Positions 30,146 to 50,623 of a DNA stretch of 64,000 nt are shown here, one piece after another. The translations under genes and the position numbers were made by a program. Under the pieces are notes generated by a model. The model was not told the origin of the DNA, did not search any database, and saw only the letters and a program-made list of their open reading frames with translations. The number at the start of each line of letters is the position of its first letter. The stretch's first letter is position 1. The stretch comes from Amphiscolops sp. MND2022 (taxonomy: Eukaryota), in contig OZ076409.1 in assembly GCA_964187785.1 (NCBI GenBank), forward strand, positions 86,428,001 to 86,492,000, read 5' to 3'.

Positions 30146-30572
30146 GGGGTAACCTGAAACAGGTTGAAAACGATCGACAAAACTGCGGTCGAAGGAATCT
30201 TCGAAGTAAACTTGTCAACGAGAATGAGATCGAATCAATGTTTTCAAACCCCTAGCGTTTTCAAATAATATTTTTGGCCGTCGGATATGCCCCCATTTCC
30301 TCTAGTGCCAGCGGCCCCTAGGGGCCGCCTATGTTCCCATCTTGCTCTGCGAGGTCGAACAGGAGCAAAGACCTAGCGGGAACGGAGATCGCGAAGCAAT
30401 CGTAGTTGGAGCTGGTCTTTGCGACGGTGAGGGCGAGCATGCATACACCGTATTTGACCCCATATTTAGTGGACAAAAGTACCTAAATTGTTTTGAACGC
30501 TTCTAAACGCTTCGAAAGATTTTTCGACTTTTTTCGATCAGTATTTTGTCGACCTGTTTCGTGGCATCCCTT
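30146..30572. mobile_element. MITE flanked by TTAA (Kolobok/piggyBac-like), carrying cassette B
   Basis: Imperfect TIR around GAAACAGGT(T/C)GA; TTAA on both sides (30142-30145 and 30573-30576). Confidence 0.55.
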
Positions 30573-31094
30573 TTAAGAAGGAGGTGGATGAGTATTGCAG
30601 GCACTTATGGCAACGAGAAATAAAGCAAGGTCTTATGTACTCAAATTACTCAGGGCTTAAAGTAAGAAACAGCATCTTGAAAATGCTAGCATCATATCCT
30701 AGGCAAATTTTTGTCAAAACGCTACGTTTCCTCTTGAATGATTTTGAAGTACGCGAAGTATTATTCAGAATTAATACGAACGAAACCGGTATTTGTCCCT
30801 ACTGTAGAGTTATCGATGATACTGCACATTTCTTATTTTCCTGCGTCTCATACCAAGAACACCGAGGGTGTTTCATTAAGGAGCTTAAAAATCAAAAACT
30901 GGCGAAACGCTGGTTTGCGAAAACAAGCATGTTATAAGCGCGTTGGCTGGATTTATTGCAAACATCGATTAATTTTTATAACCCTGCAATCTTCACTTGC
31001 GTTCCTTCTGTGTCAATTCTATTTATTATTTTCTTTGTTTTGGAATCAATGATAGAAAATCATTTCTACTGTCACATCCCGAAGATTAACTGAT

Positions 31095-31126
31095 TTCTTC
31101 TTCTTCTTCTTCTTCTTCTTCTTCTT
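31095..31126 (+). repeat. (TTC)10 microsatellite, probable LINE tail
   Basis: Read directly from the sequence. Confidence 0.9.
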
Positions 31127-31220
31127 GGTTACATAGTAACAGGTACTTAGTAAATTTAGCAGGTACATAATCAGTTCATCTGAACTTTGAGTTTATGATG
31201 ACGTAATGGTCTTCAGCGAC

Positions 31221-32203
31221 GGGGAATTCTCACACAGCAGAAGTCTCGTACAGGTAAATGGTCACTTGGCTTAATGCCATTTGGCTTAAAGTCATTTGGC
31301 TTAATGCAATTGGTCACATGGATTAATTTTTTTAAGCTAAGTGTCTCTGGTATTGGTCACTTGGCTTAAAGTCATTTGACTTAAAACCACTTAGTTGAAA
31401 ACACGTGGCATATTTTGTCGAATTTATCATTTTAACGTAGTCAGCGTATTATTATAACATGTCATATCAAGTACCCCTCGGGTATTTCCCCATTTCCTCT
31501 AGTGCCCTGCGGCCCCTTGGGGCCGCTCGAATTCCCATCTTGCTAAGCGAGGTCGAACAGGAGCAAAGACCTAGCGGGAACTGAGATCGCGAAGCGATCG
31601 TACTGGGAGCTGGTCTTTGCGACGGTGACATCGAGCGTGCATACACCGCATATGCCCCACATTATAATATTTCCGGGAGTTGACTTATTCATTCCGGGAG
31701 TTGGAATGAAGTTGGCTTTAATTTTGTGGTCACTTGGCTTAAAATTTTTAGGCCAAATGATTCGACGAAAAAATTAAGCCAAATGACTTTAAGCCAAGTG
31801 ACTTGTGACCCTCATACAGCAGAAAATGAAAATTCGGTCCCATACAGCCGAATATTTGTTAGTGCTTCAATCGGATTGCCTGAAGTTTCCAATCGAATTG
31901 AATTCTTTAAGTTGAAAACGCGTGTCAAATTTTGCCCGAATTATTACTATTACGTAGGCAGGTACGCTCACATACTTCTAGTGCCCTAAATGCAGGAGTG
32001 AAGCGGAGCGACGTGTCATTTGGCAATGCCTCAATGTTGTTACTTGGCGAAGGGAGCGAAGCGACCGAGCCATTCAACAAATATGCTAACCTTTCAAAGA
32101 AATCAAATTCCATACATACAAGCTGTAACAGCACTGAATGCTAGTAATTTGAATTCTGCTGTATGGGACCAAATTTTCATTTTCTGCTGTATGAATAGGC
32201 CCC
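31221..32203. mobile_element. GGGG-ended MITE with 8-bp TSD, carrying cassette A and a nested MITE
   Basis: TSD TCAGCGAC at 31213-31220 and 32204-32211. A 36-bp inverted repeat CATACAGCAGAAAATGAAAATT(C/T)GGTCCCATACAGC lies at about 31813 and about 32158-32193. Confidence 0.8.
31253..31810. mobile_element. Foldback-like MITE with modular TIRs, carrying cassette B
   Basis: TIRs built from GTCA(C/T)TTGGCTTAA subrepeats; imperfect 8-9-bp TSD CTCGTACA(G)/CTCATACA(G). Confidence 0.75.
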
Positions 32204-32983
32204 TCAGCGACCTCTAAAAGATAACCGCGGCTATCCCAGAAAACCAATTTAGTCTGAAACTCTTTAAGGATTTAGCGAAAATTTTATATTTTTGTCTGAC
32301 ATGATGAAACGAGGTGACATTTCCAAGGAGTTCTACCAGAAAGTACGACCAGTCGGATCGCAGCCTGCAAGACTTTACGGCCTCGCGAAAGTCCATGAAA
32401 AAGAATCCCATCTTCGTCCTATCCTGTCCATGCCTGGCTCACAATATGAAAAGTTTTCGAAAGAATTGGCTGAGATCATCAAGAAGCTTCCTGAAGCCGG
32501 TATAAGGACGGATAGAAGAATAGTGCTACAAACCATACAGTCTACGAAATTGGAAGATGATGAAATGGTGGTCAGTCTTGACATTGAAGGACTTTTCACC
32601 AACGTACCATTAGATGAAGCCTTTGAACTCACAGTAAATTTGCTATATCAAGACGATGACCATACACTTAGTTTCAGCAGATCAACCTTTCGAACACTTT
32701 TACAGATAGTGGCAAAAGACGTTGTGCTCCTTACTCACCGAGGTACTTTCCAGCAGATAGACGGTGTAGCAATGGGGAGCCCACTTGAGCCATTACTGGC
32801 GAATATTTTTGTCTCCCGGTTTGATGCTGAATTGGGATCCTTCAGCAAACTTTACACTTCCGCTATGTCAATGATGTGATACGGACATTACGGATAGGTG
32901 GGAGACAGTAGCTCCTTGACTTTCTTAACTCGATGAATCCAAACCTAAAGTTCACTATCGGGGAACCCGATGAAACAAATGGG

Positions 32984-33332
32984 GGGTGGCTGTAAATAGG
33001 TCAAATTTTTCTGGTCGAAAGGACAGAGGTCGAACCTTTTGATCGAATTGCAGGGATCGAATGGAATGCCGTCGATTTTTATCGTATTTGTTGTATGGCT
33101 CGGACGCTTCGCTCCCTTCGCCAAGTAGCAACATTGAGGCATGGCCATATAGCACGTCGCTCCGCTTCGCTTCGCTCCAGCGTTCAGGGCAATAGGGGTA
33201 TGTGAACATATCTGAATACGTTATAAAAATTTCGATCCGAGTTGTTTCGATCCTATTCGAAAATTTGGTATGTCGACCTGAGGACTAACTCTGATTTTCG
33301 ATCCGGTTCCTTCGACCTATTTCCGCCCACCA
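32984..33332. mobile_element. 349-bp Mutator-like MITE, copy 1 (carries cassette A)
   Basis: TIR GGGTGG...AAATAGGTC; 9-bp TSD ACAAATGGG. Removing it restores the Penelope frame DETNGLALLDM. Confidence 0.9.
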
Positions 33333-33987
33333 ACAAATGGGCTAGCGTTACTTGATATGAAAATTCGTCGATTTACTGATGGAACGTTATCATCTGAGGG
33401 GTACAGAAAAAATACTGACACTGGTATTCTGCTCAATTTTCACGCCCTTGGGCCGAAGACTTACAAACGAGCGTTGATCTCTGGTTTTATACATAGAATC
33501 TTCAACACCACGAGCTCTTGGTTATCACTCAACAAATCGCTCAAAGAAGCCAAGTTCTACGAAATAACCAGTATCCAAGGTCGTTTGTTGAAAATGTCAC
33601 AAACTACACCCTCAGTAAATTCCTATGTACCACAAATGTCACTGCGAACAACAACAAAGAGAAAAAAAAATAGGGATGTACAGCTAATAATGCCGGTTGA
33701 ATACAGAGGAAACGTGAGTGAAAATTTTATGAGCAAAGTGAAGAAACTGCTCCCTGGCTCATCGTTTTACTAATGCACAGCAAAACTGCGAAGCCAGATA
33801 TGTCAATTGAAAGCGCCTATTCCATATGCTTATAGGAGTAAAGTGGTCTATGAAATAACGTGTCCAGCTTGCTCTGGTGCCTACATTGGACAAACAGTCC
33901 GACACCTTGCCACAAGACTCAAAGAACATGGGATGAAAAGCGCTCCAGTCTTCAAGCATTTTCAGGCATGCAATGAGGAACTAACCC

Positions 33988-35514
33988 TCATTAGGTCTAT
34001 CAGATCTGTCAGATCTATCCCCCCACTTAGATCTATCAGCAGCGTTCGACACCGTGGATCATGAAATACTTCTGTCAATTTTATTTCAAATTGGGATTAT
34101 TGGTCAGGCGCATTCCTTGATAAAATCCTACCTGAATGGTCGAACACAATGTGTCCTTATTGATGGAAGCTACTCTGAGGATAAATCTATTGAAACAGGT
34201 GTTCCTCAAGGATCGATCTTAGGGACAGTGCTCTTCATTCTATACTTACTCCCTTTGAGGTCTTTACTTGATGAATTTCTTGCTAGTTATCATATCTATG
34301 CTAATGACATAACGATTTACTTGGAATTTGATCTGGGGACAACCTTTGCCAATTTCCTGAAACATTAGAAGATAATTGCCAGTGATTTGAAACTATTAGC
34401 CGCCTTGAAAATAAAAGTAAGCAGTTCGAAAACTCAATGTATGTTCGTTACGAATCAAAGAACTCGCCTTCCCGAGACAATCACTATTGATGGGATCAGA
34501 ATTGAGATCAATGATAGTGTCAAAGTTTTGAGAGTTACTTTGGATAACAAGTTACGTTTCTCTTCTTTCGTCAACAGCACATGTGCGAAGTCCTACTATC
34601 ACCTCAGAAGGATAACATCAATTCGAAAATATTTGTCTTTCGACCTCACAAAGTTATTGATTCTCACTTTCGTTATCAGATTATTGTAACTCACTGTTAT
34701 ATGGTGCTCCGGACTACATGATTAAAAAATTGCAAAGAGTTCAGAATAGAGCAGCATGCCTCCTTTTTCACCAGAGAAATTCCAATGTTAACCTACTTTT
34801 GAATGAACTTCATTGGCTTCCTGTTGAAAAAAGAATTAAGTACAAAATCTTATGCTTCGTATACCGTCTTTATAATGACTTGCTTGTGCCTATTTACTTG
34901 TCGGTACCGTTTTTCAGGTATCAGCAACTTGATCAGTACGATCTGAGAAGTTCCAGAGAACGAAAATGGACTGTCAGAATTACCAACAATACCTATGGAA
35001 AACGATGCTTCTGGGTATCAGGCGCTGAATTGTGGAACTCACTACCATGTGATCTTGTATTGAGCCCTTCATATGACACTTTCCAAGCACGACTAAAGAC
35101 ATACGGGTGGCTGTAAATAGGTCGAATTTTTCTGGTCGAAAGGACAGAGATCGAACCTTTTGATCGAATTGCAGGGATTGAATGGAATGCCGTCGAATTT
35201 TATCGTATTTGTTGTATGGCTCGGACGCTTCGCTCCCTTCGCCAAGTAGCAACATTGAGGCATGGCCATATAGCACGTCGTTCCGCTTCGCTTCGCTCCT
35301 GCATTCAGGGCACTAGGGGTATGTGAACATATCTGAATACGTTATAAAAATTTCGATCCGAGTTGTTTCGATCCTATTCGAAAATTTGGTATGTCGACCT
35401 GAGGACTAACTCTGATTTTCGATCCCGTTGCTTCGACCTATTTCCGCCCACCCAAGACATACCTATTCTGAACGCTTTGAGTGTTAAAAAAGCGTCATTT
35501 ACATTTTGAACTTC
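33988..35514 (+). mobile_element. 5'-truncated L2-like LINE
   Basis: LDLSAAFDTVDH, GVPQGSILGTVLF, LQRVQNRAA, LHWLPVEKRIKYK, ELWNSLP; possible AACCC TSD. Confidence 0.9.
35105..35453. mobile_element. 349-bp Mutator-like MITE, copy 2 (carries cassette A)
   Basis: Near-identical to 32984-33332; 9-bp TSD AAGACATAC at 35096-35104 and 35454-35462. Confidence 0.9.
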
Positions 35515-35688
35515 AACCCCTGATCACGCCCGATTTCTTGACGCAGTGTCTGACAGCAAAACTCTTTTGGCACTCGAAGCTGTCTATTTCAAAAGACAGA
35601 ACCCCTCTTAACACCAAAGAGGAATTCAAGGCTCGCAGCCTGCATTTTGCCTTTTAGCGCACGAGCCGCCCACCCCTATCACCACAAA

Positions 35689-36040
35689 GATGGACCTGGC
35701 CAAGCAGACAACACTTGCTAATTTGATGCTTCGGTTGCGACTAACTGTAAACGACACCGATTACTTAGCTTGACTGATATCGGAAAATGCTTCCCCATAA
35801 GCAGTGCATCCGTCCAAAAGGAACGGCCAAAAGGAAAGGTACCGCCCAAAAGGAACGGCCAAAAGGAAAGGTACCGTCCAAAAGGAACGGCCAAGAGGAA
35901 AGGTTTAATAGTGCCGTTCAGAATGTAATCCTGCCCTTTGGGACAATGATTTGGTATAAATAGAGTTGATTTCTTATCATTTATTCGTTATTAATTTAAC
36001 CTTCATTCAAATCAGTCGTCTTTTGTTATTCGACCCCACA
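35689..36040 (+). repeat. Gypsy 5' LTR (truncated; last 352 bp retained)
   Basis: Matches 41302-41646, ends CCCACA and contains a TATAAATAG box. Confidence 0.85.
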
Positions 36041-36043
36041 AAT

Positions 36044-36060
36044 TGGTGACCTCGACGTGA
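36044..36060 (+). promoter_or_regulatory. PBS complementary to tRNA-Trp
   Basis: TGGTGACCTCGACGTGA matches the complement of the eukaryotic tRNA-Trp 3' end TCACGTCGGGGTCA-CCA at 16 of 17 positions. Confidence 0.85.
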
Positions 36061-36890
36061 CGGAAGATCCGACACAATTGGAAGACTCTACCATTGCTTA
36101 TAATCACACATCTAACGGAGGTAGCGGTGATCGCACAAACAATGCTCAAGTGGGGAGAATAACAATCAAACCTCCAACTTCTTATAGAAGCAACCCGCAA
36201 GTCTGGTTCAGACAACTCGAGTCCCAATTTGCACTAGCAAATATCACCAGTTCCCAAACAAAGTTTCACCACGTCATGGGCGCATTACCAGAGGACGTCG
36301 CAATCAACATCCCACTGGACGTTACTTCTTACGAATCTCTAAAGGAGCAGATAATTGGAATCTATCAAAAAAGTCGACAGGAGTTATTGGAGGAGGCCTT
36401 AGGTTCAATTTCCCTTGACGGCCAAAAACCGTCAGTCTGTTTCCTACGCATAAAACGCAAATTAGAAGATTGCCATTTAACCGTCGATGACCAATTTTTA
36501 CGCCACAAATTCCTCCAAGCGTTACCCCCAACGACACTTGTTGCCCTGTCCGCACATCATAATTTGGCCTTGGACGATTTCGCTAAACTTGCGGATACGA
36601 TATACCAGTATTCAACGTTCGATTATCACGTAGCAGCAGTAAGACCCGATACTAAGCCCGAACATGATTCTGTTTCCCCGAACAGAAACTTTCAACACAA
36701 TCCTAGACAGCAAAAGGGAGGGATGTTTCCCTTCAGTGCGGGGCAAAAACCAAAAACTTGCCAATTTCACGTCTTCTACGCAAATAATGCCAAGCGGTGT
36801 AAACCCTGGTGTAAGTGTCCTGGTCAAAAACCACAGTTGATTGATGCTTCATCACGACCAGCAACCCCAAACAACCCAGCGTCAAACTAA
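36057..36890 (+). CDS. gag: Gypsy Gag
   Basis: [50 protein letters not shown] and terminal [18 protein letters not shown]. No ATG precedes the conserved domain; the listed GTG overlaps the PBS. Confidence 0.9.
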
Positions 36891-39800
36891 GAACCCCTAA
36901 CGTAGTGGCAGCTTGCACTGGGGGTGATTTATTCATTGAGATCGCTGCCTGTATCATTTCTAGCCAGCAAAAATTTCTTATAGACACAGGATCAATGGTG
37001 TCCATTGTTAAACCCAATTTAATCCATCCAGTTACTATTCTGCCTTCCAACGCAGTCCTATCCACCATTAAAGGTGACGCGTTGAACGTTTACGGAAAAG
37101 TTACTATACCAATTGAAATCCCTTCCTTACGACGGTGCATCAGCCATACCTTTTTTGTCGCTGACGTGTCGTGTAATATTCTTGGTATTGATTTCTTGTC
37201 GTCTACGAACGATTTCTCAATTGATTGCAAAAACGGCCGCCTCAAGGATAACACAACATTGTTGTCTACTGCAACTCAATTTAAAAAGTGCAACCACGTC
37301 TCTGTGAACAAAGTTGAGACAGTGATACCTGATATCGGAAACGACGAGCTGAAATCAATGATGATCAAAAATGCAGAAGTTTCCGGTGATGTTGATTTCA
37401 ACAGCACAGCTCAACACCAAACGCTACATCGTATTGAACTGACGGGTAAAGGCCCGTATGGCAGCCCGAGGCGTTTGTGCCCCGAGAAATACAGGATCGC
37501 CAAACAGTGTTTCGATTCCATGATAGCAACAGGGATATGTCGTCCATCATGCTGCCAATATGCCTCCCCATTGCATATGGTACCTAAAAAGGAACCTAAC
37601 GATTGGAGGCCTTGTGGAGATTACCGACGATTAAATTCAGTCACTAAAAGGGATTTCTACCCCCTTCCACAACTATCGGATTTCAATCTTTATGGCAAAA
37701 AAGTTTTTAGTAAGTTAGACTTAGTAAAAGCATACCATCAGATACCAGTACATCCCGATGACATAGAGAAAACTGCTGTGACAACACCGTTTGGTCTTTT
37801 TGAATTTCTACGAATGCCATTTGGTCTCCGAAATGCAGGACAGACATTCCAACGCTTCATGAACACAGTTTTCCAAGGATAAGATATGGTTTTCACCTTC
37901 GTGGACGACGTCCCAATTGCATCAGACGATATAACGACTCACTTGAAAGACATCGAAACGGTATTGGAACGCCTGAAGCAATACGGACTGCGCTGCTCTA
38001 TAAAGAAATGCGAATGGATGAAAAATGAGATCGAATTCCTCGGATTTTTGATCACTGCTGAAGGTTTACAACCCAAAGCGGACAAAGTCGAAGCTATTCA
38101 ACGATGGCCGTGTCCCACGAGTTACAAAAGTTTGCAAAGTATGATGGGAATGTTCTCTTTTTATCGACAACATGTTCCTCATTATGCAGAAATAGTCGAA
38201 CCTCTCCAAACGTTGCTCAATGATAGTCAGTTATCCCGTACTTCAAATTCGACTATCGACACACCACTGCGTTGGGAACCCTTCCACGATGACGCTTTGA
38301 TATTATTGAAGAACAAACTTTCTGAACGTACCATGTTACACAATTTGTCTCCAGATGGTACTCTCACTCTCACTACTGATGCTTCTGACAGAACAATTGG
38401 CGGAGTCTTACACGACAACAGAACGGACGGGACAAACGTGCCTCTAGCATTCTTTTCACGAAAATTATCTGTCGCAGAACGCAATTATTCTGCTTTTGAT
38501 AAAGAACTTTTAGCAATTTTTGCCGCAACACAGAAATTTCGACGGTTTATTGAAGGTCGTTACTGTGTCGTTTTTACCGACCACAAACCCATTGTTGCGT
38601 CCTTTCGAAAAACAACCGACCACTCCCCTCGACAATCCCGGCAGTTTTCGTTTTTGTCGGAATTTATTGACGACATTGTTCACATTGCTGGTGACAGCAA
38701 TGTGGTAGCTGATTGTCTATCACGTCCCGAAGAAGAAGAGAGTTGCGTACAACAGCCGAAACTTGTATCTGCTGTAACTTGTGACCCTTTCGACTTACAG
38801 GCAATCGCTGAAGCACAAACACAAGAGTTTAAGGAGGAAATGTGTCAGGTGTACAGTCAAGGCACCAAAATTGTTACTATTCCACCAGACATAAAATTAC
38901 TCTGCGATAATACTCTCATTCCCCGCCCAATAGTTCCACCAGAGTTACGGAGAAAACTGTTCCTCAACTTTCACAACATGTCACATCCGAACTGGAAGGC
39001 AACTAATAAACTAATTTCAGCAGGTTTCACCTGGCCGCATTTGGCTTCGGACGTGAAGGCTTGGTGCAAGGAATGTTTACACTGTCAGAAAAGCAACGTT
39101 ACACGACACACAATAACGCCTCCTGCATCAACCGCAGGTAATCCAGCCCGTTTCCAGCATTTACATTTGGACATAGTAGGTCCTCTGCCTGCAGTGTCGA
39201 ATTGCCCGAATAGATATATTCTTTCCTTCATCGATCGATCAACAAACTGGATAGAAGCAACTCCCATTAGTTCTATCACCGCAGAAGTCGTGGCTGAAAC
39301 ATTTATTTCTACTTGGTTTTCGCGGTTCGGAGTCCCACTCTACATTACTGCCGATCAAGGACGCCAGTTCGAATCTGATTTGTTCTCCGAATTATCCAAA
39401 TTGCTTGGTTTTGCACGTCTTCGTACTACACCTTATCACCCCCAAGCCAATGGTAAAATCGAAAGGTACCATCGAACTTTAAAAGCTTCTTTAACAGCCT
39501 CACCTTTACCGTGGACTCAAGCTTTACCGGTCGTTTTATTCAGTCATAGAATTCTGCCCAATGCTATGGGAATATCCCCTTTTCAACTGGTAACCGGATC
39601 GGATGCTTTTGTTCCCACTATTTTTGAAGAAAAACAAGGACATGCATTCACTCGTGATTACGTCTCTAAACTGGCCACGCATTTGCAGTTATTACAATTT
39701 ACAACACCTTCATTGACTCCTCATTCCGGTTCCAAGCAGTATGTTCCTCGGGACCTTCAGGAGTGCAGTCATGTTTGGCTACGAGTTGATCGTACCAGGC

Positions 39801-40156
39801 GTCCCTTGGAAGCACCCTATAGTGGTCCCTTTCCTGTTCTGGAACGCAATGATAAAACAATGTTGATACAATGCACAAACGGCCCTACCCGAGTGAGTTT
39901 AACCAGAGTTAAACCTTGCTACCTTCCATCAGAGCCACATATCAAACCAACTGTGGCAAAATTGTCAGAGGACAATGGGTCCTTTTGTTCTTGTGGGGGA
40001 CCTTTTAACACCGATATGATCGGCTGCGACGGTCCTAATTGTGTCATACAATGGTTTCATTTTCCGTGTGTAGGAGTTGACAAATCTCCTCAAGGCAAGT
40101 GGTTTTGTCCTACTTGCAGGGAACAACGAGTACAGAAAACCGTTTCATTCGCATGA
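36845..40156 (+). CDS. pol: Gypsy Pol (PR-RT-RNase H-IN-PHD) with one in-frame TAA at 37880-37882
   Basis: ORFs 36905 and 37886 share a frame. Motifs [82 protein letters not shown], then a PHD finger. Confidence 0.92.
39983..40117 (+). other. ING-type PHD finger (C4HC3) at the integrase C-terminus
   Basis: [45 protein letters not shown]; all eight zinc ligands are present. Confidence 0.92.
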
Positions 40157-40492
40157 TATATGTCAACACTCCGTTATTTCATGGGGGACCTCTGTAACCT
40201 ACCCACCCTGGATATCGGAAAAATTATTTCAATTCCAATTTTAGTCACCTATTTTTTTTAGACAACACATTATATTAAACGTATAATTCAAGCCGTGGTA
40301 TTGATGGGCAACAATGCATTGAGACAACTTATCATGATTACGTAATTACGTAGTAGTATGATGACTCATATGAGTCATTTCAGAAATCACCAGAAATCAG
40401 AAATGTGACCACACTTCAAAACGACACAAAGGATCGTTTTCAACCCATGGAATCACTTCTCTTCAAAAAACAGCACCAAACAGTCGGGAGAA

Positions 40493-41413
40493 ATGCAAAT
40501 CAGCTCACACGAAATGTCCCTTCTGCAACTCTACAGGACCGCCAAAATGCAGCTCGGAGGGATGTTACCAAACCTCGCCAATTTGACATTGATGTCTATT
40601 ACGCCGCAGAATGGAATGGTTGCTATTACACAGTCAACTGAGTTGTTCGCTCAAGTGCCGGTGGACAATGAGCAAATTGTTAGCAATCCTGCACCTAGAA
40701 CACTTCCCCGCAATCCGACACCACAGAAACAGCGTGAACACCACTTATCCAGCTCTTCGGATTCGAGCAGCAGTTCGTCCGAGACCGATTAAGAACCACC
40801 AACCGAAAGGCCGCAGAAGAAAAAGGACGGCAAGAAAGAACGGTCCTCGGCCGCCAAAGAATTGGCACGACCCCCAGCTAACGAGTGGCACAACAACCTG
40901 GTACCGCTGAATAAGCTGGCCAGCCTGTCCACATCGCAGATAAGCAAATTAGACGATGTCGACGATCAAATCCGTGACCTCACGCCGGAGATTGATGACA
41001 TCAACCTTCCCTTTCAAAGTGAAGGTTTAGCCAAAAAAGTGCCTCCAGGAGCCAAATTTGGTAATTGTGTTATTTCACGAAAGAGTGGCATGACAGGTTT
41101 TGAGATCAACAATATGTGCCGAGCCATGGGACGTTTCGCTGGTTTGAAGTACGACCAGATTGAAGCAAACGACAAGCCAAATTACATGACCCGAGCTACT
41201 TATGCTGCAGTGTTGGTTCACCGTCCGTGGTTGGTGGCGCAAATAATCGACATCCCGAGGTCAACATTGCGGAAAAGAGTCAAGGTTTTTGCGAAAAAAG
41301 TGATGGACCTGGCCAAGCAGACAACACTTGCTAATTTGATGCTTCGGTTGCGACTAACTGTAAACGACACCGATTACTTAGCTTCACTGATATCGGAAAA
41401 TGTTTCCCCATAA
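40493..41413 (+). CDS. Orphan ORF of about 306 codons inside the long LTR; one internal TAA at 40790-40792
   Basis: ORFs 40493 and 40862 are in the same frame and the intervening codons are open. Ser/acidic and basic linker, then a globular-looking C-terminal half; no recognised domain. Confidence 0.6.
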
Positions 41414-41422
41414 GCAGTGCAT

Positions 41423-41518
41423 CCGTCCAAAAGGAACGGCCAAAAGGAAAGGTACCGCCCAAAAGGAACGGCCAAAAGGAAAGGTACCGTCCAAAAGGAA
41501 CGGCCAAAAGGAAAGGTT
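41423..41518 (+). repeat. 3 x 32-bp tandem repeat in the LTR (also at 35810-35905)
   Basis: Unit CCG(T/C)CCAAAAGGAACGGCCAAAAGGAAAGGTA, located between the ORF stop and the TATA box. Confidence 0.9.
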
Positions 41519-42323
41519 TAATAGTGCCGTTTAGAATGTAATCCTGCCCTTTGGGACAATGATTTGGTATAAATAGAGTTGATTTCTTATCATTTATTCG
41601 TTATTAATTTAACCTTCATTCGAATCAGTCGTTATTCGACCCCACAGTAGCATCTACCTTTATCCTTAGAACTCTACTATCTGTGCTTTTTAGCCTTTCT
41701 TTATTTTATGTTTTATACTTGTGTTTTTTAGATAAACTGAAGATGATCTCATAAATGATCGAAAAGCTTCTTTTGAACACAATGCTTTTTCTCTTTCACG
41801 AAAATTTTGTAGTATTTTAGGACTTTTCGGCTTTATTTCGGCTGTTTTGCAATGAAAATAATTATATGTCATAACAGATACAGTCAACTCCTGTTAATTA
41901 GTATCCGAATAGTTCGGATCTTCGTTTAATTTCGGATGCATCCGAGACCCCCGTTTCAGGATGTCCGAAGGAATGCCATCTGGTCAGTTCGTATTTTTCA
42001 TCATTCGTACTATTTTATTCGGTCCCTAGCAATACGAATTAGGTGGATTCAACTATATCCAAAAATTGCCTTTGAGGTTCAACAGTGTTGCAATACAATT
42101 TCATGCATCCCTGAGCTAGTACATGACCTGATTCCCGCATCAAATAAATCTGTCTTTGTTGATATTGCTGTTTATGCAGCGATTAGTCCTTTCAAATTAT
42201 TGTATATTGAGTGTCAGCAATAATAGTGTTTTCAGTAGGCGCTTTTTGGTAGAAAGTGTAAGACTTACATTTTTTTCGTCAGTCACCCAGTAACGTCCAC
42301 TATTATAAATTTCATCGAACAAC

Positions 42324-42590: not shown

Positions 42591-43049
42591 TTTTTTTTTA
42601 CCGGAGCCCTCCTTCGATTTTTGGCACAAACAGCGTATTGAGAGCATAGATAGCCCCTTAAGATTTTCGGCGCGATACGATTTAACGAAGAATTGTGGAA
42701 AAGGCCTATGGTTTTCCGATTACGGGAAGCACTGACTTTTCTTCCAACTGTTGTTCACTGGGGTCTCCTTCAATTTTTAGCAGAGACAATGTTCGGGAGC
42801 ATAGGTGGGCCTCCTAGGGCGTTTTCGGCACTTCGGGTGCGCCGGAAACGTTGTCGAATGCTTTCACAATGAACTAATGCGGTTTATTAGCAGCATTTGT
42901 AACTTTCTGCAGATATAGTGTTTTTAATGGATGAATTGACGACTTACTTTAGTGTTTTGACTGTATAATTTTAGTTCATTGTTGTACGCATCTACTTTAA
43001 AGAGGAGGACGCGGAGATTTATTGAATAGTTGGAATTGTTATTTTCCGC

Positions 43050-45975
43050 CAGGGATTGGAAAGCCATAATGGCCATAACCATATATGGCCATAAATATAG
43101 GGAAATTATTTATGGTACTGGGTTTAAAAATGGCCATTATTTATGGAAAGCCATCCATATATGGCACCCTATTTTCACTATATAATTTTAAAGTTTCATA
43201 ATGATCAACCAATAATTTTTCAACTTATAATTTTCAGATTGACATGGATCTCCAAAATAAATCAGTTGTTGAGTTCTTTTTCACTCCTGTTGGTGATGAC
43301 ATTTTCAAGTGCAGGGATAGGAAAAATTGATTGCAATTATTTTTTTATTTTTTAAGAGAACCAATCAATTAATTGAATTTGAGAAAAAATCAATCAATTA
43401 TTGCACTTTACAGCAAATAATTGGTTTCTTTCTCAGCTTGAGACAGAACATCATTAACTGTTCTTATGTCCCAAAATCGCTTATTTGTTCTTAAATATAA
43501 TTGTTCTTCGAGATTCGTCGGGTTCAATCGTTGCCGGAAATCACTCGATGCAATACCAGCGCTACTAAAAAACGTTCTAGAATGTTTGAAGTTGACAAAA
43601 TGAAGCGGGTATCGGCATATTTTGTCGATGGTGCTTGTTTCTTCTTGTTCAGAATCATGCTAGCAAAATCATCACAAGTATCTGGGACGTCTTCTTCCAC
43701 CACGATGTGCTTTCTGAGGTTTTTACATGCCAGTTGCTCGTCAATCGTCATTTCTTTTTCCTTACCATCCTGAATTTTCACTATTCCAGATTCGAAGTTG
43801 GGGCTTCTAATTATTCTCGCAGTGGGAGACAAATACTTGTCAGAACCATCAAGATCGGGGAATTTCCGTTTGATTTCATTGAAAAGAAGCCGGACGCAAG
43901 AAGCATCAGTACTCTCTCGTTGCAAAGCCATGGTAACTGAATCTAATGTCGCCAATTTTTGTTGAACTTCGGAAAATGTGGCATTTTCTTTCGGAGATGG
44001 AATGAATTCCAATGTTTTCTTCATCAAAGTACACCATAAATTATTTCAGCTGCATATAACGGTTTATCATTTGATGTGTGCTAGACCAACGTGTTATATT
44101 GGCTTGAATAGGTCTCAGTTGTGTGAATTGCCTCAAGGTTGTTGGCTTTCTTCGTAAGGCTGACGTAATTATCAATCCTCTGCTGCTTACCATCATCTTT
44201 GTCGTAGTCCGGGTGTTGGGTTTTTATGTGGTTCAGCAAGTTAGTCCAACCACTTCCTTTTTTTGCTTCATCTGCTTTTTGCATTGACATTGCCAAATGT
44301 CCGGCTCATCTACAGGCGCAGGCTGATGGAAGTATTGCATGCAGATGGCCTTAATTGGCTTGGATGTCATATCACAACCTGAAAATGTGAAAAAAAAGTT
44401 ATTCAACCCAAAGCTGCTTTGCATGACATTGAAAAATGAAAATGAAGCATTTCACTCAGACATGTCAGATTGTAGTGGAAACGAATTTTTCAATTAATTG
44501 ATACTTCACCAATCAATTATTCAATTATTGGTTTCGGGCCCAATCAATTAATTTTGCCAATTAATTGCAATTAAATTAATTGGCAATCAATTATTTCCAA
44601 TCCCTGTTCAAGTGTCTATGCAATAAACGGATCAAGCAAAGGCTACACCAATCTCATGAGTCACCTGAAGAATGTCCAAAAAGAAACTTGGGAGAACGAC
44701 TATAGGAAGTCAAAATTTTTCGGTGGATGGAATGGGTGATTCTAGAAGTTCGTGAGTTCAGTTTCGTTGAAAAACCTCTGGTGCGTAAGAATACCAAGTT
44801 GGAGCCCATTTGTCAAAAAACGCTCCAAATGTATATCGACTTAGTTACTGTTCAAGTGGAGGAAAAATTGCCGACGCTCTACCAAGCAACCTTGGAAATA
44901 TTGTGGATGGATGGTCGCAGCAAAGTTCAGCAGATCGATTTGTTGCATTTTATTGATAAATGTGATTCGGAAATCGCTGAGCTCCTCCGGAACCCTTCTG
45001 TAGAATTGAAGATACAAGATCTGATTGTCGATTTCACTGATATACAATCAGTCATGAATCTTATTTTGATAAGTTTTGCGGTCTGCTTTTGTTGCAAAAA
45101 CTGATGTTTCGAATGTTAATTAAATGCTTAGTTTGAGGCACCCGATGTTGATTGGTGGACTTGATCAAGTGAAAGCGAACAGAACAACAATTAGGTCGAA
45201 AACAAAACAAACAAAGGTGTGAGATTCATGATTCAAAGTTCGATATATTATGCAACAATGGAAAGTTCTCGTTTGAAATGTCAAGTACATGACTCAATCG
45301 GTAACTTTGAAACTTCAAGAAGAGTCTGTTACAATGGCAGAAGTTCGGCGCCTTTTCGATGCTCTCATTCTCAGGTTCCATTCCATGTGCAAGTATCTCA
45401 GTGAGCGTGCTGATGTTGTCGAAAATCGGCAATTCGAAGCGGCTGTTGTGAGGTCTTTTACGACTCCCTATGAAGACGTGAAATTGACTGAAAAAGTTCA
45501 TCTGGGACGTTTTAGTACACAGCGTGAATCCATTTCACCTGCAAGTCAGCCTGACACTGGTAACAAATCATTCACAGAGGCGGTCCTCCTGAACCCATTC
45601 CCGCATGTAAAACGATGAATAATTTGAATTGGGTCCCACTGACTTCCAATATTGTGGATAGAGTATTCACCAAAGTCAAAAATATCAGAACCCCATTGCG
45701 TAACGGAATCCTTCCAATTCATTTTGAGGAGAATTTGTATCTAGTTGTCAATCAAAAGTATTGGAACATTGATACTCTGTCCTAGGTTTTTCAATCTGAT
45801 TGATTGATTGATAATTCTGAAATTTGCTCTTCGATTTTTTTCAAGTTTGTTTCTGTAGACCATATATATGCCCAATATGGCCATTATTTATGGAAAAAGA
45901 GAAAAATATGTATATATTTGTGGTAGTGAAATTTCAGGTACCATATTTATGGCCATACCATAATTCCAATCCCTG
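43050..45975 (+). mobile_element. hAT DNA transposon (outer), degenerate transposase
   Basis: TIR CAGGGATTGGAA; 8-bp TSD TTTTCCGC at 43042-43049 and 45976-45983; ATGGCCATA subterminal repeats. ORF from ATG 43244 reads FKC|LCNK..KGYTNLMSHL, FSFVEKPLVRK, WVPLTSNIVDRVF. Confidence 0.9.
43312..44606 (-). mobile_element. hAT DNA transposon (inner, internally deleted), nested in opposite orientation
   Basis: TIR CAGGGAT(A/T)GGAAA; 8-bp TSD TTCAAGTG at 43304-43311 and 44607-44614; CAATTAATT subterminal repeats. Encodes WQCQCKK..GSGWTNLLNHIKTQH and RFILSTSNILERF. Confidence 0.9.
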
Positions 45976-46062
45976 TTTTCCGCCCACATATAATGGAGGA
46001 AAATCATGATCTGTGATGCGTTGTTTCCCAAATTCTGCGAAATCCCCTCCCAGTTCCTCCAT

Positions 46063-48476
46063 CTACTTCACTTATAGTTGAAGTATATAGCTACTTGACT
46101 ATCTTGGCTCCATCCACTACTTGACTATTTTAGTTACTTGAACTGCACTTGCCAAAACTCCACCATGGCGCAGTTGGTTGTGCGTCTGCCTGGCAGACAC
46201 GAGGTCGTGGGGTTCGAACCCGGGCTGATGCGTCATCTTTTTAGCGGAAAATATCCCGGTGTTTAGCGGGCGTCCTGTTAACTTATTGGATAGCTTCGTA
46301 CAAGAAAGTGTCGTGGAGACTAGAGCAAATATTCAAAAACTTCCTTTGGCCAACCAAGGCTAATTTGAAGTCGATGGCGTCAACTGGCTAGGGTGCGAAA
46401 AATGTCGAACCTCGGATTGGCAGTTCGTGTATGGGTTACAGCTTCGATGATTTCAAATCTCCAAATGTAAATTTTCACTCAGTCCCTGGAGACTGCCAGA
46501 GTAATGATGACCAAAATTCACGAGATGAAGACAACATTAAGAAGAAATTCAGAATGAGGTCCAACTTTCGTCAACTGTCAAAGCAGTAAAGCCTAAAAAC
46601 CCTCAAGGTAAATTTTATTTGGATATTTTGAAATCCAAATATGACCCCCTCCCAAGTTAGCTGCGTTCTTCGCGAATTTCGGATTACTAAGCGGGAGAAA
46701 ATAAAACTCGGTGAATCATTGAGCATGCGGAAGAAGAGTTGGAATCGGCCATGAGAGTCTTGAGCTTTGAAGCCAAACAGCTCATCTTCCAGACGCTTGT
46801 GTGCCAACTGGTTAGACAACTAACCGGCTTGTGCTCCGGAATATTTTACTGAGAAATTTCTGGCTCTTCTTCCATCTACTTCACTTATAGTTAGCTACTT
46901 GACTATCTTGGCTCCATCCACTACTTGACTATTTTAGTTACTTGAACTGCACTTGCCAAAACTCCACCATGGCGCAGTTGGTTGTGCGTCTGCCTGGCAG
47001 ACACGAGGTCGTGGGGTTCGAACCCGGGCTGATGCGTCATCTTTTTAGCGGAAAATATCCCGGTGTTTAGCGGGCGTCCTGTTAACTTATTGGATAGCTT
47101 CGTACAAGAAAGTGTCGTGGAGACTAGAGCAAATATTCAAAAACTTCCTTTGGCCAACCAAGGCTAATTTGAAGTCGATGGCGTCAACTGGCTAGGGTGC
47201 GAAAAATGTCGAACCTCGGATTGGCAGTTCGTGTATGGGTTACAGCTTCGATGATTTCAAATCTCCAAATGTAAATTTTCACTCAGTCCCTGGAGACTGC
47301 CAGAGTAATGATGACCAAAATTCACGAGATGAAGACAACATTAAGAAGAAATTCAGAATGAGGTCCAACTTTCGTCAACTGTCAAAGCAGTAAAGCCTAA
47401 AAACCCTCAAGGTAAATTTTATTTGGATATTTTGAAATCCAAATATGACCCCCTCCCAAGTTAGCTGCGTTCTTCGCGAATTTCGGATTACTAAGCGGGA
47501 GAAAATAAAACTCGGTGAATCATTGAGCATGCGGAAGAAGAGTTGGAATCGGCCATGAGAGTCTTGAGCTTTGAAGCCAAACAGCTCATCTTCCAGACGC
47601 TTGTGTGCCAACTGGTTAGACAACTAACCGGCTTGTGCTCCGGAATATTTTACTGAGAAATTTCTGGCTCTTCTTCCATCTACTTCACTTATAGTTAGCT
47701 ACTTGACTATCTTGGCTCCATCCACTACTTGACTATTTTAGTTACTTGAACTGCACTTGCCAAATATCCACCATGGCGCAGTTGGTTGTGCGTCTGCCTG
47801 GCAGACACGAGGTCGTGGAGTTCGAACCCGGGCTGATGCGCCATCTTTTTAGCGGAAAATATCCCGGTGCTAAGCGGGCGTCCTGTTAACTTATTGGATA
47901 GTGTACAAGATTTCGTACAAGAAAGTGTCGTGGAGACAAGAGCAAATTTTCAAAAACTTCCCTTGGCCAAGCATGGCCAATTTGACGTCGATGGGGTCAA
48001 CTGGCTAGGGTGCGAAAAATGTCGAACCTCGGTTCACGGTTCGTGTATGGGTTACAGCGTCGATGATTTCAAATCGCCAAATGTTATTTTAACTCAGTTC
48101 CTGGAGACTGCCAGAGAAGTGACCAAAATTCACGAGATGAAGACCACATTAGGAAGAAATTGAGAAAGACGTCCACCTTCCGTCAACTGTCAAAGCAGTA
48201 AAGCCTAAAAATCCTCAAGGTAAATTGTATTTGGATGTTTTGAAATCCAAATATGACCCAAGTGAGCTGCGTTCTTCGTGGATTTTGGAATACAAAGCGG
48301 GAGAAAATAAAAACCGCAGGTGAATCATTGAGCATGAGGAAGAAGTTGGAATCGGCCATGAGAGTCTTGAGCTTTGAAGCCAAAGAGCTCCTCTTCCAGA
48401 CGCTTGTGTGCCACCCAGTTAGACAACTGACCGGCTTGTGCTCCGGAATATTTTACTGAGAAATTTCTGGCTCTTG
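46063..48476 (+). repeat. Tandem array of three 804-bp units, each a spacer plus a tRNA-headed SINE-like element
   Basis: Heads CACCATGGCGCAGTTGGTT...GGTTCGAACC at 46161, 46965 and 47769 (804-bp spacing). Units 1 and 2 appear identical; the body of unit 3 is clearly diverged. Confidence 0.9.
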
Positions 48477-48479
48477 CCG

Positions 48480-49400
48480 AGCCCCGCTCCGATGTACGAA
48501 ACATCCTCGAAATTCGAAGAACCAATTTCTCAAGATATCTTTGATCCCCAGTTCGAAAATGGCCAGTTCACGAAGCAGAAGATATTAAACATTCATAGCC
48601 AACTACCTGCGAATGAGAGCAAAACACGTCGATCTGCTCCAATCCTGTTCCGCGATGTCAGCGATAATATCTCAGCATATCCTACAGATCTTCAAAAAGT
48701 GTTGCAAAGCTCAGTCTTCGCTTGTTTAGAAAAAAGCTATTGTGAGTTTTGACCAATAGAACCAATCTAATTAATATGCATACCATCAGAAATATTCGAG
48801 CGAATACTGTTCAAGCGTTTGATCCTGCAAGTCAAACCCTGTCGGCATCAAGGTCAATGTGGATTTGTGCCCTGCCGATCCACAAAGCTACAACTGTTTA
48901 TGCTCCCGTAAATATACCCTGGGTTGGAGAACAATTTGTGCGTCGATGTTATGCTGATTTCAGTGAAGCCTTCGACTACTTTGATCACGGAATTTCGCCC
49001 CGAAAAATTGACCGGTTTCACATTGAGGGAATACTTGCGGAGACAGCTTCATCTTCAGATGGTCTCAAAGGAACCGCGTTAACGAAAGTCTGTTTCCAAA
49101 ATGAGATTCGAAAGCGGAGTATCCCAGGGATCTCTGGTTGGACCTTCAATGTTCCTCAGATAGATAATTGTTACTAAAGCTAATAGGACTGAATCGAAGA
49201 GCTTAGCAATCAGCGCTAGATGAAGTCTACACATGGATACAGTACAGCAAATAGCTTTCAAATTTTGACAAGTGCTCTTTTTTGACGTTCAAGGGTGATA
49301 TGGAGACTTTTTATCTGGAAAACGACCCTCTAGAAAATGATCCCCGATTGATTCTACAAAACGACCAGAAATGAAACCATTATATGGACAAAGCTGGTTC
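48480..49400 (+). mobile_element. Highly degenerate LINE RT fragment
   Basis: YADFSEAFDYFDHGI and SIPGISGWTF resemble RT domains 3-4 (YxDFxKAFDxVxH; GVPQGSxLGP). Confidence 0.55.
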
Positions 49401-50221
49401 GAAAGGATTCAACTTTTTTTAGTATGAGCAAGCGTAATGTTTCAATCACTTCCGAAACTAGATCTCTACGAAGCATGATTGTTCCTAAAATTTTATTATG
49501 CTATCTATTGAGGAGTTTTTGTATGTCTTCAGACAACTGGAAAATTTGCAGAAAAGTCGTTCAATAATCTTGGGGAAAAACTATCTTGTATAGACTCAAA
49601 CTTTTATGGCTGACAATGTATCTACACCTGAACGACTTCTTCGTGCTTTCGAAACTGATACGAAGTCCTACCGCATTGATGATTTGAGACTGCCGGAAAT
49701 GATTTTCTTTGTCCGCGGAGTATTGAAATGCCCAACAAATTCCAAATACAGGAGGCTTTCTCTCAGAGAACCACGAGAGTAGTGAACTTCTTAAAGCGAA
49801 CATCTTGGATTGCGTTCAGCAAAGCCTGAAACACCAGCAACTGCAATTATTTTGAAAGAATTTTGTAGACTTCGATGAAAATCTGTTCATGGAGAATTGT
49901 ATGCGACTGTCTTAGAAAAATTACCGGAACAAGTGGAATCAATCACAGTATCATGTGTCGTGTGCAGACCCCTACTACCTGAAAAGCTGACAGCATTGGT
50001 GAATGATGCATAGTATCGCGTGTCGTGTGCCATGTCCTAATCCACTGACAACTTGCCAATGGTAAGAAACGGCAGGCAGCTTCCAGAGAGAATACTTACC
50101 ACGTGATTGAGTGACTGTGACGGTGTGAGAAGCCCCTTGCGGATTTTCATAGAAGCCCTACTACTAGTAGTAGTAGCTTGGAACTTCGATATTGACTTAC
50201 ATTCTTCTCGATTACTCTAAT

Positions 50222-50623
50222 GGGGATGGTTCAAATCGTAGAATATTCAAAGCGTCGAAAGCAGTTTACACGCAGTAAATACTGCGCGTCATAGTCACGT
50301 GACCAAACTTTCATTCAATGAACCAATCAAATTCAGTGAAATGAATACAGCACAAGCGACGAACTAATTACGATAACGTAGTCAGCTATGTCCACATACT
50401 CCTAGTGCCCTAAATGCAGAAGCGAAGCGGAGCGACGTGCCATTTGACCATGCCTCAATGTTGCTACTTGGCGAAGGGAGCGAAGCGACCAAGCCATACA
50501 ACAAATATGCTAACCTCTTCAAATTATAACCTGAAAATAATCGCTGCTACGGAATTCTTTCGACGCTTTTAATAGCTTTGATTTTTTCGACGGTTTGAAT
50601 ATTCTACGATTTGAATAGTCACC
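50222..50623. mobile_element. 402-bp Mutator-like MITE carrying cassette A
   Basis: Inverted repeat TTCAAATCGTAGAATATTCAAA(G/C)CGTCGAAA; perfect 9-bp TSD TACTCTAAT at 50213-50221 and 50624-50632. Confidence 0.85.

What the first reader, a model, noticed from the sequence alone, without database searches (positions are those of the whole stretch)
30283..50515. Two GC-hairpin cassettes recur inside five unrelated MITE families
Seen: cassette A (about 130 bp) occurs at 31965-32091, 33085-33211 (reverse), 35206-35332 (reverse) and 50386-50515. Cassette B (about 180 bp) occurs at 30283-30463 and 31481-31660, and partially at 3880-3942. Their hosts have unrelated TIRs and different TSDs: TTAA-flanked, foldback-like 8-9 bp, GGGG/8 bp, and two different 9-bp-TSD families. 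A and B share CTAGTGCC near one end, contain GCGAAGC or GATCGC-GAA-GCGATC, and have loose ATATG-containing direct repeats at both ends; B also has GCGGCCCC-NN-GGGGCCGC. Established: d(GCGAAGC) is an exceptionally stable GNA-loop ssDNA mini-hairpin, and hairpin-plus-CTAG ends typify Helitron rolling-circle elements. Inference: a tiny passenger element that moves via ssDNA and targets MITE interiors, or a functional module (protein-binding site, origin or promoter) repeatedly acquired by non-autonomous elements.
Basis: partly seen in the sequence, partly recalled or inferred. Interest (0 to 1): 0.7.

Follow-up and report, generated by a model that had tools for sequence, protein, structure and literature searches.

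The report
Shared core inside many MITE families
Two related GC-rich segments of about 150 and 190 bp form the shared middle of at least eleven different miniature transposon (MITE) families in this repeat-rich eukaryotic genome; they were most likely handed from family to family by nested insertion and faulty DNA repair, not by moving on their own.

Summary
The repeats are real. Cassette A occurs four times and cassette B two and a third times at the stated places, inside five different TIR-and-TSD shells.

Other contigs of the same assembly show both cassettes are high-copy: 244 ORF clusters for A and 835 for B. They sit in at least 11 shells. A and B share homologous ends, so they are two versions of one core.

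The Helitron or ssDNA-passenger reading fails:
- CTAG lies inside the conserved block, not at an end.
- Cassette ends are not fixed.
- A is not unusually structured, and its GCGAAGC is a variable (AGCGA)n microsatellite.
- B's stems show no compensatory change, and one stem is broken in a whole amplified subfamily.
- No empty sites were found.

What the data show instead:
- Shell pairs share blocks of about 260 bp (core plus flank) of differing extent.
- Each shell carries its own core subtype.
- Chimeric arms exist.
- Nesting is heavy and the cores are preferred landing sites: 15% of one family's insertions hit B, which covers 0.7% of the DNA.

Best reading: a core carried by cut-and-paste MITEs and re-shelled by nesting plus repair or recombination. 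The closest precedent is the coral CMITEs. Function and origin remain open.

The parts
31943..32098 (+). Cassette A, copy A1, in shell H4
   Evidence: 89% identical to A4 over 157 bp.
33079..33225 (-). Cassette A, copy A2, in shell H1
35200..35346 (-). Cassette A, copy A3, in the second H1 copy
50367..50523 (+). Cassette A, copy A4, in shell H5
30278..30466 (+). Cassette B, copy B1, in shell H6
31475..31663 (+). Cassette B, copy B2, in shell H3
3876..3941 (+). Cassette B, first 66 nt only, with the type-c left flank
   Evidence: The same left flank occurs in L038 and L040.
32984..33322 (-). Shell H1 (TIR GGGTGGsnGnAAATAGGTCGAA), 9-bp TSD ACAAATGGG
   Evidence: 97% identical to the second copy. 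TSD read. Further 9-bp TSDs for this family.
35105..35453 (-). Shell H1, second copy, 9-bp TSD AAGACATAC
31221..32203 (+). Shell H4 (TIR GGGG..TCAyACAGCAGAAAATG), 8-bp TSD TCAGCGAC. It carries A1 and has H3 nested in its left TIR.
   Evidence: 42-nt arms, 95% complementary. TSD read.
31243..31810 (+). Shell H3 (foldback-like, GGTAAATGGTCACTTGGCTTAA repeats), 8-bp TSD CTCGTACA/CTCATACA. It carries B2.
   Evidence: Other copies with TSDs TGTTCACA and TTCCCGC. This is the commonest context among the 120 listed of 835 B clusters.
50222..50622 (+). Shell H5 (TIR GGGGATGGTTCAAATCGTAGAATATTC), 9-bp TSD TACTCTAAT. It carries A4.
   Evidence: 31-nt arms, 97% complementary. TSD read.
30147..30569 (+). 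Shell H6 (TIR GGGTAACCTGAAACAGG), 8-bp TSD CTTTTAAG. It carries B1.
50264..50524 (+). Inner block of about 260 bp (about 100 nt of flank left of cassette A, then A and its 16-nt right extension) shared with a different shell, H12
   Evidence: over 90% identical inside the block; arms outside it do not align.
30251..30512 (+). Inner block of about 260 bp (B plus 27 nt on the left and about 46 nt on the right, bounded by a short inverted repeat GCGTTTTCAAA/TTTGAACGC) shared with a different shell, H8
31393..31444 (+). 52-nt block left of B2 in H3, homologous to the block left of A1 in H4 (31910-31961). It ends in TAACGTAGTCAG.
   Evidence: 77% identical, E = 5.5e-6. Also.

Best explanation
What it is. 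A and B are two diverged versions of one GC-rich core segment of about 150-190 bp. The core is the central, non-TIR part of a large network of mosaic MITEs in a TE-rich eukaryotic genome that is probably metazoan.

How it moves. The core has no mobility of its own. It travels with the cut-and-paste transposition of its shells. Each shell has its own TIRs, subterminal repeats and an 8- or 9-bp TSD.

How it passes between shells (inferred). A core-bearing MITE lands inside another MITE, or MITEs land in and around a core. The cores are preferred landing sites, so this happens often. Abortive gap repair with template switching, a deletion, or unequal recombination between cores then leaves the core between new TIRs, with a variable remnant of its previous flanks. 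The new shell then amplifies.

Shown: the copies, the shells, the mosaic shared flanks, the per-shell core subtypes, the nesting, the insertion preference and one recombinant.
Inferred: the repair step that makes a new shell, and that the core itself is neutral filler.
For: 1. Many shells. A lies in H1, H2/H2b, H4, H5 and H12. B lies in H3, H6, H7, H8, H9 and H11. TIRs and TSDs were read; flank clusters are.
2. High copy number in one assembly: 244 ORF clusters for A and 835 for B.
3. A and B share ends: 24/30 matches on the left (0 of 20000 shuffles reach this score) and 20/26 on the right (p = 0.0009).
4. The shared sequence has no fixed ends.
  - Left of A: H2 shares only about 5 nt; H1, H3, H4, H5 and H12 share about 25 nt (..TAACGTAGTCAG); H3 and H4 share 52 nt; H5 and H12 share about 125 nt.
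  - The right extension CTAACCTCTTCAAA is in H2, H4, H5 and H12 but not in H1.
  - H6 and H8 share a block of about 260 bp around B, bounded by its own short inverted repeat, which looks like the remnant of an earlier shell.
5. Cores differ between shells by only a few diagnostic sites, while the arms do not align. Subtypes follow shells, which fits one acquisition per shell followed by amplification.
6. Nesting is seen directly.
  - H3 in H4 (window).
  - H2 in the A of H1, and H1 in B (L036).
  - H3 in B and H2 in B (L037).
  - H3 in A (L038).
7. Insertion preference. 17 of 115 H1 right flanks run into B, which covers 0.71% of sampled DNA (P = 1e-16), at 14 or more different junctions.
8. 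A chimera exists: H2 left arm + A + H1 right arm, inside a 312-bp tandem duplication.
9. After insertion the core decays about as fast as the arms: 3.5% versus 4.7% amino-acid mismatch over 116 copies.
10. Precedents. CMITEs have a conserved internal region with differing TIRs (PMC2872659). Animal Pack-TIRs arise by gap filling or replication-fork switching (PMC8277862).
Against: - No intermediate was caught in the act. There is no shell whose core still carries complete TIRs of an older shell; the H6/H8 inner inverted repeat is only 10-12 nt.
- In every shell the whole core is kept, from the left ATATG region to the right one. A purely neutral capture model does not predict this.
- The shortest shared boundaries (H2 on the left, H1 on the right) fall at the ATATG motifs. 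That would also fit a site-specific or microhomology-guided event.
- The sample is small: 64 kb of window plus about 122 kb of other contigs. Those contigs were chosen because they hold cassettes.
- No autonomous transposase matching any shell was found.
Confidence: 0.5

Rival explanations
1. The cassette is a discrete passenger element that inserts by itself into MITE interiors. The mechanism would be Helitron/HUH-type ssDNA transposition or an ATATG-centred site-specific recombination. A and B would be two subfamilies with common ends.
For: - A and B share about 30 nt at one end and about 26 nt at the other but differ inside, as subfamilies of one mobile element do.
- Both ends carry an ATATG-containing direct repeat.
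- The shortest shared boundaries fall at these motifs.
- In B, read in reverse, a GC hairpin lies 6 nt before CTAG.
- In H1 the cassette sits exactly at the centre of the shell's palindrome.
Against: - CTAG is internal; 22 or more conserved nt follow it in all shells.
- Most shells share flank well beyond the repeats, and to differing extents.
- No junction-spanning empty site occurs in 186 kb.
- No free-standing copy with sharp ends was seen. One B context (H9) is unresolved.
- A has no significant structure.
- The direct repeat of A is not significant.
- No Rep/Hel, HUH or tyrosine-recombinase ORF was found.
Confidence: 0.12
2. The core is a functional module that makes its carrier MITE more successful, which is why every shell keeps it whole. 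Candidate roles: a transposition enhancer, a non-palindromic spacer that stabilises foldback elements, or a promoter or protein-binding site. How it spreads between shells could be the same as in the best explanation.
For: - The complete core is retained in all 11 or more shells and sits centrally.
- The core-bearing families are the abundant ones.
- The CMITE authors proposed the same for their conserved core.
- The block left of A in H5 and H12 carries CACGTG, CCAAT and TATA-like motifs.
- In 7 H1 copies the core is slightly better conserved than the arms: 96.2% versus 92.7% and 94.3%.
Against: - There are no compensatory changes in any of B's 23 stem pairs.
- The G-to-A change that breaks the GATCGC/GCGATC stem is fixed in the H6, H7 and H8 copies sampled (5 of 14 aligned B copies), and H7 and H8 recur as several copies each.
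- A has no stable fold.
- Over 116 copies the difference between core and arm is small: 3.5% versus 4.7%, p = 0.03.
- No RNA family matches.
- Ascertainment: only core-bearing shells were looked for.
Confidence: 0.2
3. All shells descend vertically from one ancestral core-bearing MITE. The TIRs and arms diverged along with their transposases while the core stayed conserved.
For: All shells share one architecture: G-rich termini, subterminal short repeats, 8-9-bp TSDs and a central core.
Against: - Cores of different shells differ at only a few sites while the arms cannot be aligned at all. That would require extreme selection on the core alone.
- The shared flanks are mosaic: H1 has the left extension but not the right, and H2 the reverse.
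- The same left block precedes A in H4 and B in H3.
Confidence: 0.1

Closest known systems
CMITEs of Acropora corals (Wang et al. 2010, PMC2872659)
   Same: Several MITE families have different TIRs but an internal region that is better conserved between families than the TIRs. They also show tandem arrays and new elements created by nested insertion. The origin of the core is unknown.
   Different: - The CMITE core is 75 bp and unrelated in sequence.
- All CMITE families are piggyBac-type (TTAA, CCYT ends) and about 100 bp long.
- Here there are two related cores of 150-190 bp in shells of 340-570 bp with 8- or 9-bp TSDs.
- Here the shared flanks are mosaic, and the cores are insertion hot spots.
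Pack-MULEs / Pack-TIRs: TIR elements that pick up foreign DNA between their ends (Tan et al. 2021, PMC8277862)
   Same: A TIR shell carries sequence that is not its own. The proposed origins are gap filling or replication-fork/template switching followed by transposition. Many shells here start with GGG, and two have 9-bp TSDs as Mu does (PMC2774946).
   Different: Pack elements carry fragments of single-copy host genes, usually a different one in each element. Here the same repeat-derived core recurs in many shells, and no parent gene is known.
pearl / DTC84 / HINE-type modular elements of bivalves and insects (PMC3879986, PMC7492417)
   Same: [quoted passage not shown] A microsatellite lies next to the core, a palindrome lies in the core, and core and flanks vary independently.
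   Different: Those elements are Helentron-type, have AA/TT targets and hold tandem core repeats. Here each shell holds a single core, has clear TIRs and makes 8-9-bp TSDs.
Helitrons
   Same: In B read in reverse, a GC-rich hairpin lies shortly before a CTAG.
   Different: The CTAG is not terminal. The ends are not fixed. No A/T target or empty site was seen, and no Rep/Hel partner. A lacks the hairpin.

Membership tests
Helitron / Helentron | Constant element ends: 5'-TC and 3'-CTRR at the very termini | tested here: not met
   CTAG lies 24-28 nt inside the conserved block, and 22 or more conserved nt follow it in every shell. The shared extent differs between shells.
Helitron / Helentron | GC-rich hairpin a few nt upstream of the 3' CTRR | tested here: inconclusive
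   B read in reverse has GCGGCCCC..GGGGCCGC 6 nt before CTAG. A has no comparable hairpin.
Helitron / Helentron | Insertion without TSD between A and T (or T and T), shown by empty sites | tested here: not met
   No junction-spanning empty site for any of 11 shells in 186 kb. The bases flanking the cassette are not consistently A/T.
Helitron / Helentron | Autonomous partner encoding Rep/helicase with the same ends | tested here: inconclusive
   None among the ORFs scanned, but only about 186 kb of the genome was available.
MITE (the shells) | Terminal inverted repeats | tested here: met
   arms of 31-44 nt at 72-97% complementarity for H2-H7. H1's are imperfect (read). None was found for H9.
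MITE (the shells) | Target-site duplication of constant length per family | tested here: met
   - H1: 9 bp in 5 insertions.
- H5: 9 bp.
- H2, H3, H4, H6, H7, H11: 8 bp.
MITE (the shells) | Small, non-coding, high copy number | tested here: met
   Shells are 340-570 bp. There are 244 and 835 ORF clusters of cassette-bearing copies, all from one assembly.
MITE (the shells) | Autonomous transposon with matching TIRs | tested here: inconclusive
   No DDE transposase domain in the ORFs scanned. The superfamily is not assigned; Mutator-like is a guess from the GGG ends and 8-9-bp TSDs.
CMITE-type group (MITE families with a common conserved core) | Internal region more conserved between families than the TIRs | tested here: met
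CMITE-type group (MITE families with a common conserved core) | The CMITE core sequence itself, TTAA TSD and CCYT termini | tested here: not met
   No match to the published core. TSDs are 8-9 bp and termini are G-rich.
Pack-TIR / Pack-MULE | The internal fragment is copied from a host locus outside transposons | not testable with these tools
   The assembly cannot be searched by DNA here. Exact-word scans of public metagenome and viral contigs gave only chance matches.
Tyrosine-recombinase (Crypton-like) or integron-like cassette | Short direct repeats at both junctions with host-specific sequence immediately outside them | tested here: inconclusive
   ATATG repeats are present but weak. The outside sequence is host-specific only for H2 (left) and H1 (right); elsewhere it is shared between shells.
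SINE / small RNA gene | Pol III head (tRNA, 5S or 7SL) or a match to a known RNA family | tested here: not met
   No Rfam or tRNA match on any cassette. The tRNA-like sequence at 4001-4081 is a separate repeat.

The most novel reading that the evidence does not exclude
The core is an exchangeable unit in its own right, a parasite of parasites. It would be inserted into MITEs, or swapped between them (A for B in the same framework), by recombination centred on its ATATG-bearing ends. Its pull on incoming transposons would be part of a cycle that keeps generating new MITE families.
Probability: 0.12. Interest if true: 0.75.

Novelty: new variant of a known kind. Interest (0 to 1): 0.45.

Why it matters
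How new MITE families arise is an old open question, and so is why some carry internal sequence unrelated to any transposase gene. The coral CMITE core has been called a mystery since 2010.

This genome offers a much richer case:
- two related cores;
- a dozen shells;
- more than a thousand copies;
- visible mosaic breakpoints;
- a measurable insertion preference for the cores.

With the full assembly one could date each re-shelling event, find intermediates, and test directly whether the core helps transposition or merely attracts it. For genome annotation, it also warns that clustering repeats by internal similarity will merge families that different transposases mobilise.

Tried and rejected
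- Rfam, at gathering threshold on the whole window and in sensitive mode on 29800-35800 and 50100-50700: nothing on the cassettes.
- tRNA scans: one tRNA-like sequence at 4001-4081, none in the loci, none in a cassette.
- Exact-word scans of public metagenome and viral contigs with cassette 17- to 20-mers: only word-length chance hits in GC-rich prokaryotic contigs.
- A protein-word search with the diverged A1 ORF found no candidates and was wasted.
- Covariation test on B's three stems: none.
- Empty-site search for 11 shells: none.
- Pfam scan of large unassigned ORFs for a transposase, Rep/Hel or recombinase: none.
- CMITE core sequence in the window: absent.
- Composite-transposon idea (each arm a whole small MITE): the H1 arms have no inner TIR, so it was dropped for H1.
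- SINE idea from the tRNA-like sequence next to the partial B: the tRNA-like repeat is a separate element, with conserved sequence upstream of the tRNA part rather than downstream.
- The organism was not identified. All related contigs come from one ENA metagenome-assembly record. The window is not taken for human.
Full report
**Observation**

The four A copies align over about 146-157 bp at 82-89% identity. The two full B copies align over 190 bp at 86%. A further 64-66 nt of B's left end lies at 3876-3941. These are far beyond chance (E = 1e-34 to 1e-60).

The window has no N. It is a TE-rich eukaryotic stretch, and I do not take it for human:
- a Gypsy-type element at 35689-41646;
- copia-type integrase and RT pieces;
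- other RT fragments.

**Getting more of the genome**

Public DNA scans gave only chance word matches. The window's own ORFs are on record, however. The window lies on a 401,757-bp contig of one ENA metagenome-assembly record, annotated with prokaryote-style ORFs. One such 'gene' of 84 aa runs across cassette A2.

I used it as a protein query and found 244 clusters, all from long contigs of ENA assemblies. A 74-aa ORF across a B copy found 835 clusters, some with up to 274 members. Every contig then fetched came from that same assembly record. So both cassettes are high-copy repeats of this genome.

Seven 12-20-kb loci around such ORFs were fetched (L035-L041, about 122 kb). They hold 16 more A and 24 more B pieces.

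**The shells**

I read the junctions, scanned for inverted repeats and clustered the flanks. This gives the following shells.

- A lies in:
  - H1 (GGGTGGGCGGAAATAGG.., 9-bp TSD in five insertions);
  - H2 and H2b (GGGTCAGGGACATTTCG.., 8 bp);
  - H4 (GGGGAATTCTCACACAGCAG.., 8 bp);
  - H5 (GGGGATGGTTCAAATCG.., 9 bp);
  - H12 (TTTTCGGAATAATGG repeats).
- B lies in:
  - H3 (GGTAAATGGTCACTTGGCTTAA.., 8 bp);
  - H6 (GGGTAACCTGAAACAGG.., 8 bp);
  - H7 (..GGGCAATAAGTTCGA, 8 bp);
  - H8 (GGCAAATTGTC repeats, in tandem arrays);
  - H9 (TTAGATC repeats, no TIR found);
  - H11 (GGGAACAGAACGTTTCGGC.., 8 bp).

A1's shell, H4, has the 8-bp TSD TCAGCGAC, and H3 with B2 is nested in H4's left TIR with its own 8-bp TSD.

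The shells have different TIR sequences and different subterminal repeat motifs. They share one architecture and G-rich termini, so 'unrelated' is too strong. Their superfamily could not be assigned because no transposase was found.

**The cassettes**

- A and B are homologous at both ends: 24/30 on the left, including CTAGTGCCC (0 of 20000 shuffles), and 20/26 on the right (p = 0.0009). Their interiors differ. They are two versions of one core.
- A is not a hairpin cassette. Its fold is no better than shuffled sequence. Its GCGAAGC motifs belong to an (AGCGA)n run that varies from 1 to 4 units between copies.
- B has three inverted repeats (8, 9 and 6 bp; z = -2.1). Across 14 copies none of the 23 pairs shows a compensatory change.
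- The G-to-A change that breaks the GATCGC/GCGATC stem is present in the sampled H6, H7 and H8 copies (5 of the 14 aligned), and H7 and H8 recur as several copies each.
- No Rfam family or tRNA model matches.
- After insertion the core decays about like the arms: 3.5% versus 4.7% amino-acid mismatch over 116 H1 copies, and 96% versus 93-94% DNA identity in 7 copies.

**Why it is not a Helitron-like passenger**

- The CTAG is 24-28 nt inside the conserved block in every context.
- The sequence shared between shells has no fixed ends.
  - To the left of A, H2 shares about 5 nt; H1, H3, H4, H5 and H12 share about 25 nt; H3 and H4 share 52 nt; H5 and H12 share about 125 nt.
  - To the right of A, H2, H4, H5 and H12 share 16 nt more than H1.
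  - B shows three or more flank types, each shared by several shells. H6 and H8 share a block of about 260 bp bounded by its own short inverted repeat.
- The same left block precedes A in H4 and, 36 nt further out, B in H3.
- No junction-spanning empty site exists for any shell in the 186 kb.

**What the data favour**

- Core subtypes follow shells. For example, one G/A site separates H1 from H2, H4, H5 and H12, and B has H3-specific and H6/H8-specific sites. The cores of different shells differ at only a few positions while the arms cannot be aligned. That fits one recent acquisition per shell followed by amplification. It does not fit slow divergence of TIRs around an ancient core.
- Nesting is everywhere: H3 in H4; H2 in the A of H1; H1, H2 and H3 in B; H3 in A.
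- The cores are preferred landing sites. Of 115 H1 right flanks read from the protein hits, 17 run straight into B at 14 or more different junctions. B covers 0.71% of the DNA sampled away from the query genes (P = 1e-16). H3 ends abut A at six or more positions in the same set.
- One locus shows H2 left arm + A + H1 right arm inside a 312-bp tandem duplication. This is the product expected of unequal recombination between two A cores.

**Mechanism (inferred)**

Shells move by cut-and-paste, and cores ride along. Frequent nesting into and around cores sets up configurations such as a core-bearing MITE inside another MITE, or two copies of one MITE around a core. Abortive gap repair, template switching, deletion or unequal exchange then carves out a new TIR-core-TIR element. 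That element keeps a variable remnant of the old flanks.

Gap filling and fork switching are the documented routes for animal Pack-TIRs (PMC8277862). Why the whole core is always kept is not explained by this alone. A benefit to the carrier, or a role of the ATATG-bearing ends in the exchange, remains possible. Both are listed as rivals.

**Comparison with known systems**

- The closest precedent is the CMITE group of Acropora. It has six piggyBac-type MITE families whose 75-bp internal region is better conserved than their TIRs, plus tandem arrays and a new element created by nested insertion. The core's origin is unexplained (PMC2872659). The sequence there is unrelated, and the shells differ in kind (TTAA versus 8-9 bp).
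- Modular pearl/DTC84/HINE elements share the idea of flanks acting as a cassette for cores, but they are Helentron-type.

I therefore rate this a new variant of a known kind. It is richer and more tractable than CMITE, but not a new category.

**Limits**

- Only 186 kb of the genome was readable, and the extra loci were chosen through cassette-bearing ORFs.
- The organism is unknown. A CNNM-type gene in L037 suggests a metazoan.

Noticed in passing
window 4001-4081 (-); L038 1560-1690 and 2345-2470: A tRNA-like sequence (Rfam tRNA 46 bits; ARAGORN gives an odd anticodon) recurs with about 50 nt of conserved sequence upstream of the tRNA part. Each time it lies 60-85 nt from a B copy cut at B position about 67. 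It is probably a separate tRNA-derived dispersed repeat.
   Followed up: partly
L035-L039 and the protein hits P0002-P0120: MITE family H1 lands in cassette B about 18 times more often than B's share of the DNA predicts (17 of 115 flanks versus 0.8% expected), at many different positions. H3 likewise abuts cassette A at six or more positions. The GC-rich cores act as insertion hot spots.
   Followed up: yes
L037 9835-10460: A 312-bp tandem duplication whose repeat joins the H2 left arm, cassette A and the H1 right arm. This is the product expected of unequal recombination between A cores of neighbouring MITEs.
   Followed up: partly
window 50275-50385; L041 about 15950-16075: The block of about 125 nt left of cassette A that H5 and H12 share contains CACGTG, CCAAT and a TATAAAA-like motif in promoter-like spacing. 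No tool here can test a eukaryotic promoter.
   Followed up: no
L037 8700-9760 and 14070-14540: B copies with GGCAAATTGTC-repeat arms stand head to tail (B, about 200-bp spacer, B, and so on). This is a tandem MITE array like those reported for CMITEs.
   Followed up: partly
window 35689-41646: A Gypsy-type LTR retrotransposon with LTRs 96.6% identical (35689-36040 and 41302-41646). Its long ORFs (36057-40156) carry DUF7041, RT, RNase H and integrase domains.
   Followed up: partly
window 46054-48475: A unit of about 810 bp repeated three times in tandem (90-95% identity).
   Followed up: no
window 11920-12075: A 156-bp near-perfect palindrome (87.5% identity), probably a small foldback element.
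   Followed up: no
L039 9497-9565 and 9597-9752: Short palindromic MITEs that carry the H2/H2b terminal motifs (GGGACATTTGGGCGAC; ACGTTTCGTCACCAGCC) but no cassette. They are core-less relatives of core-bearing shells, not precise empty sites.
   Followed up: partly
window 56014-57780 (+): A 588-aa ORF with no Pfam match even at E = 0.1.
   Followed up: partly
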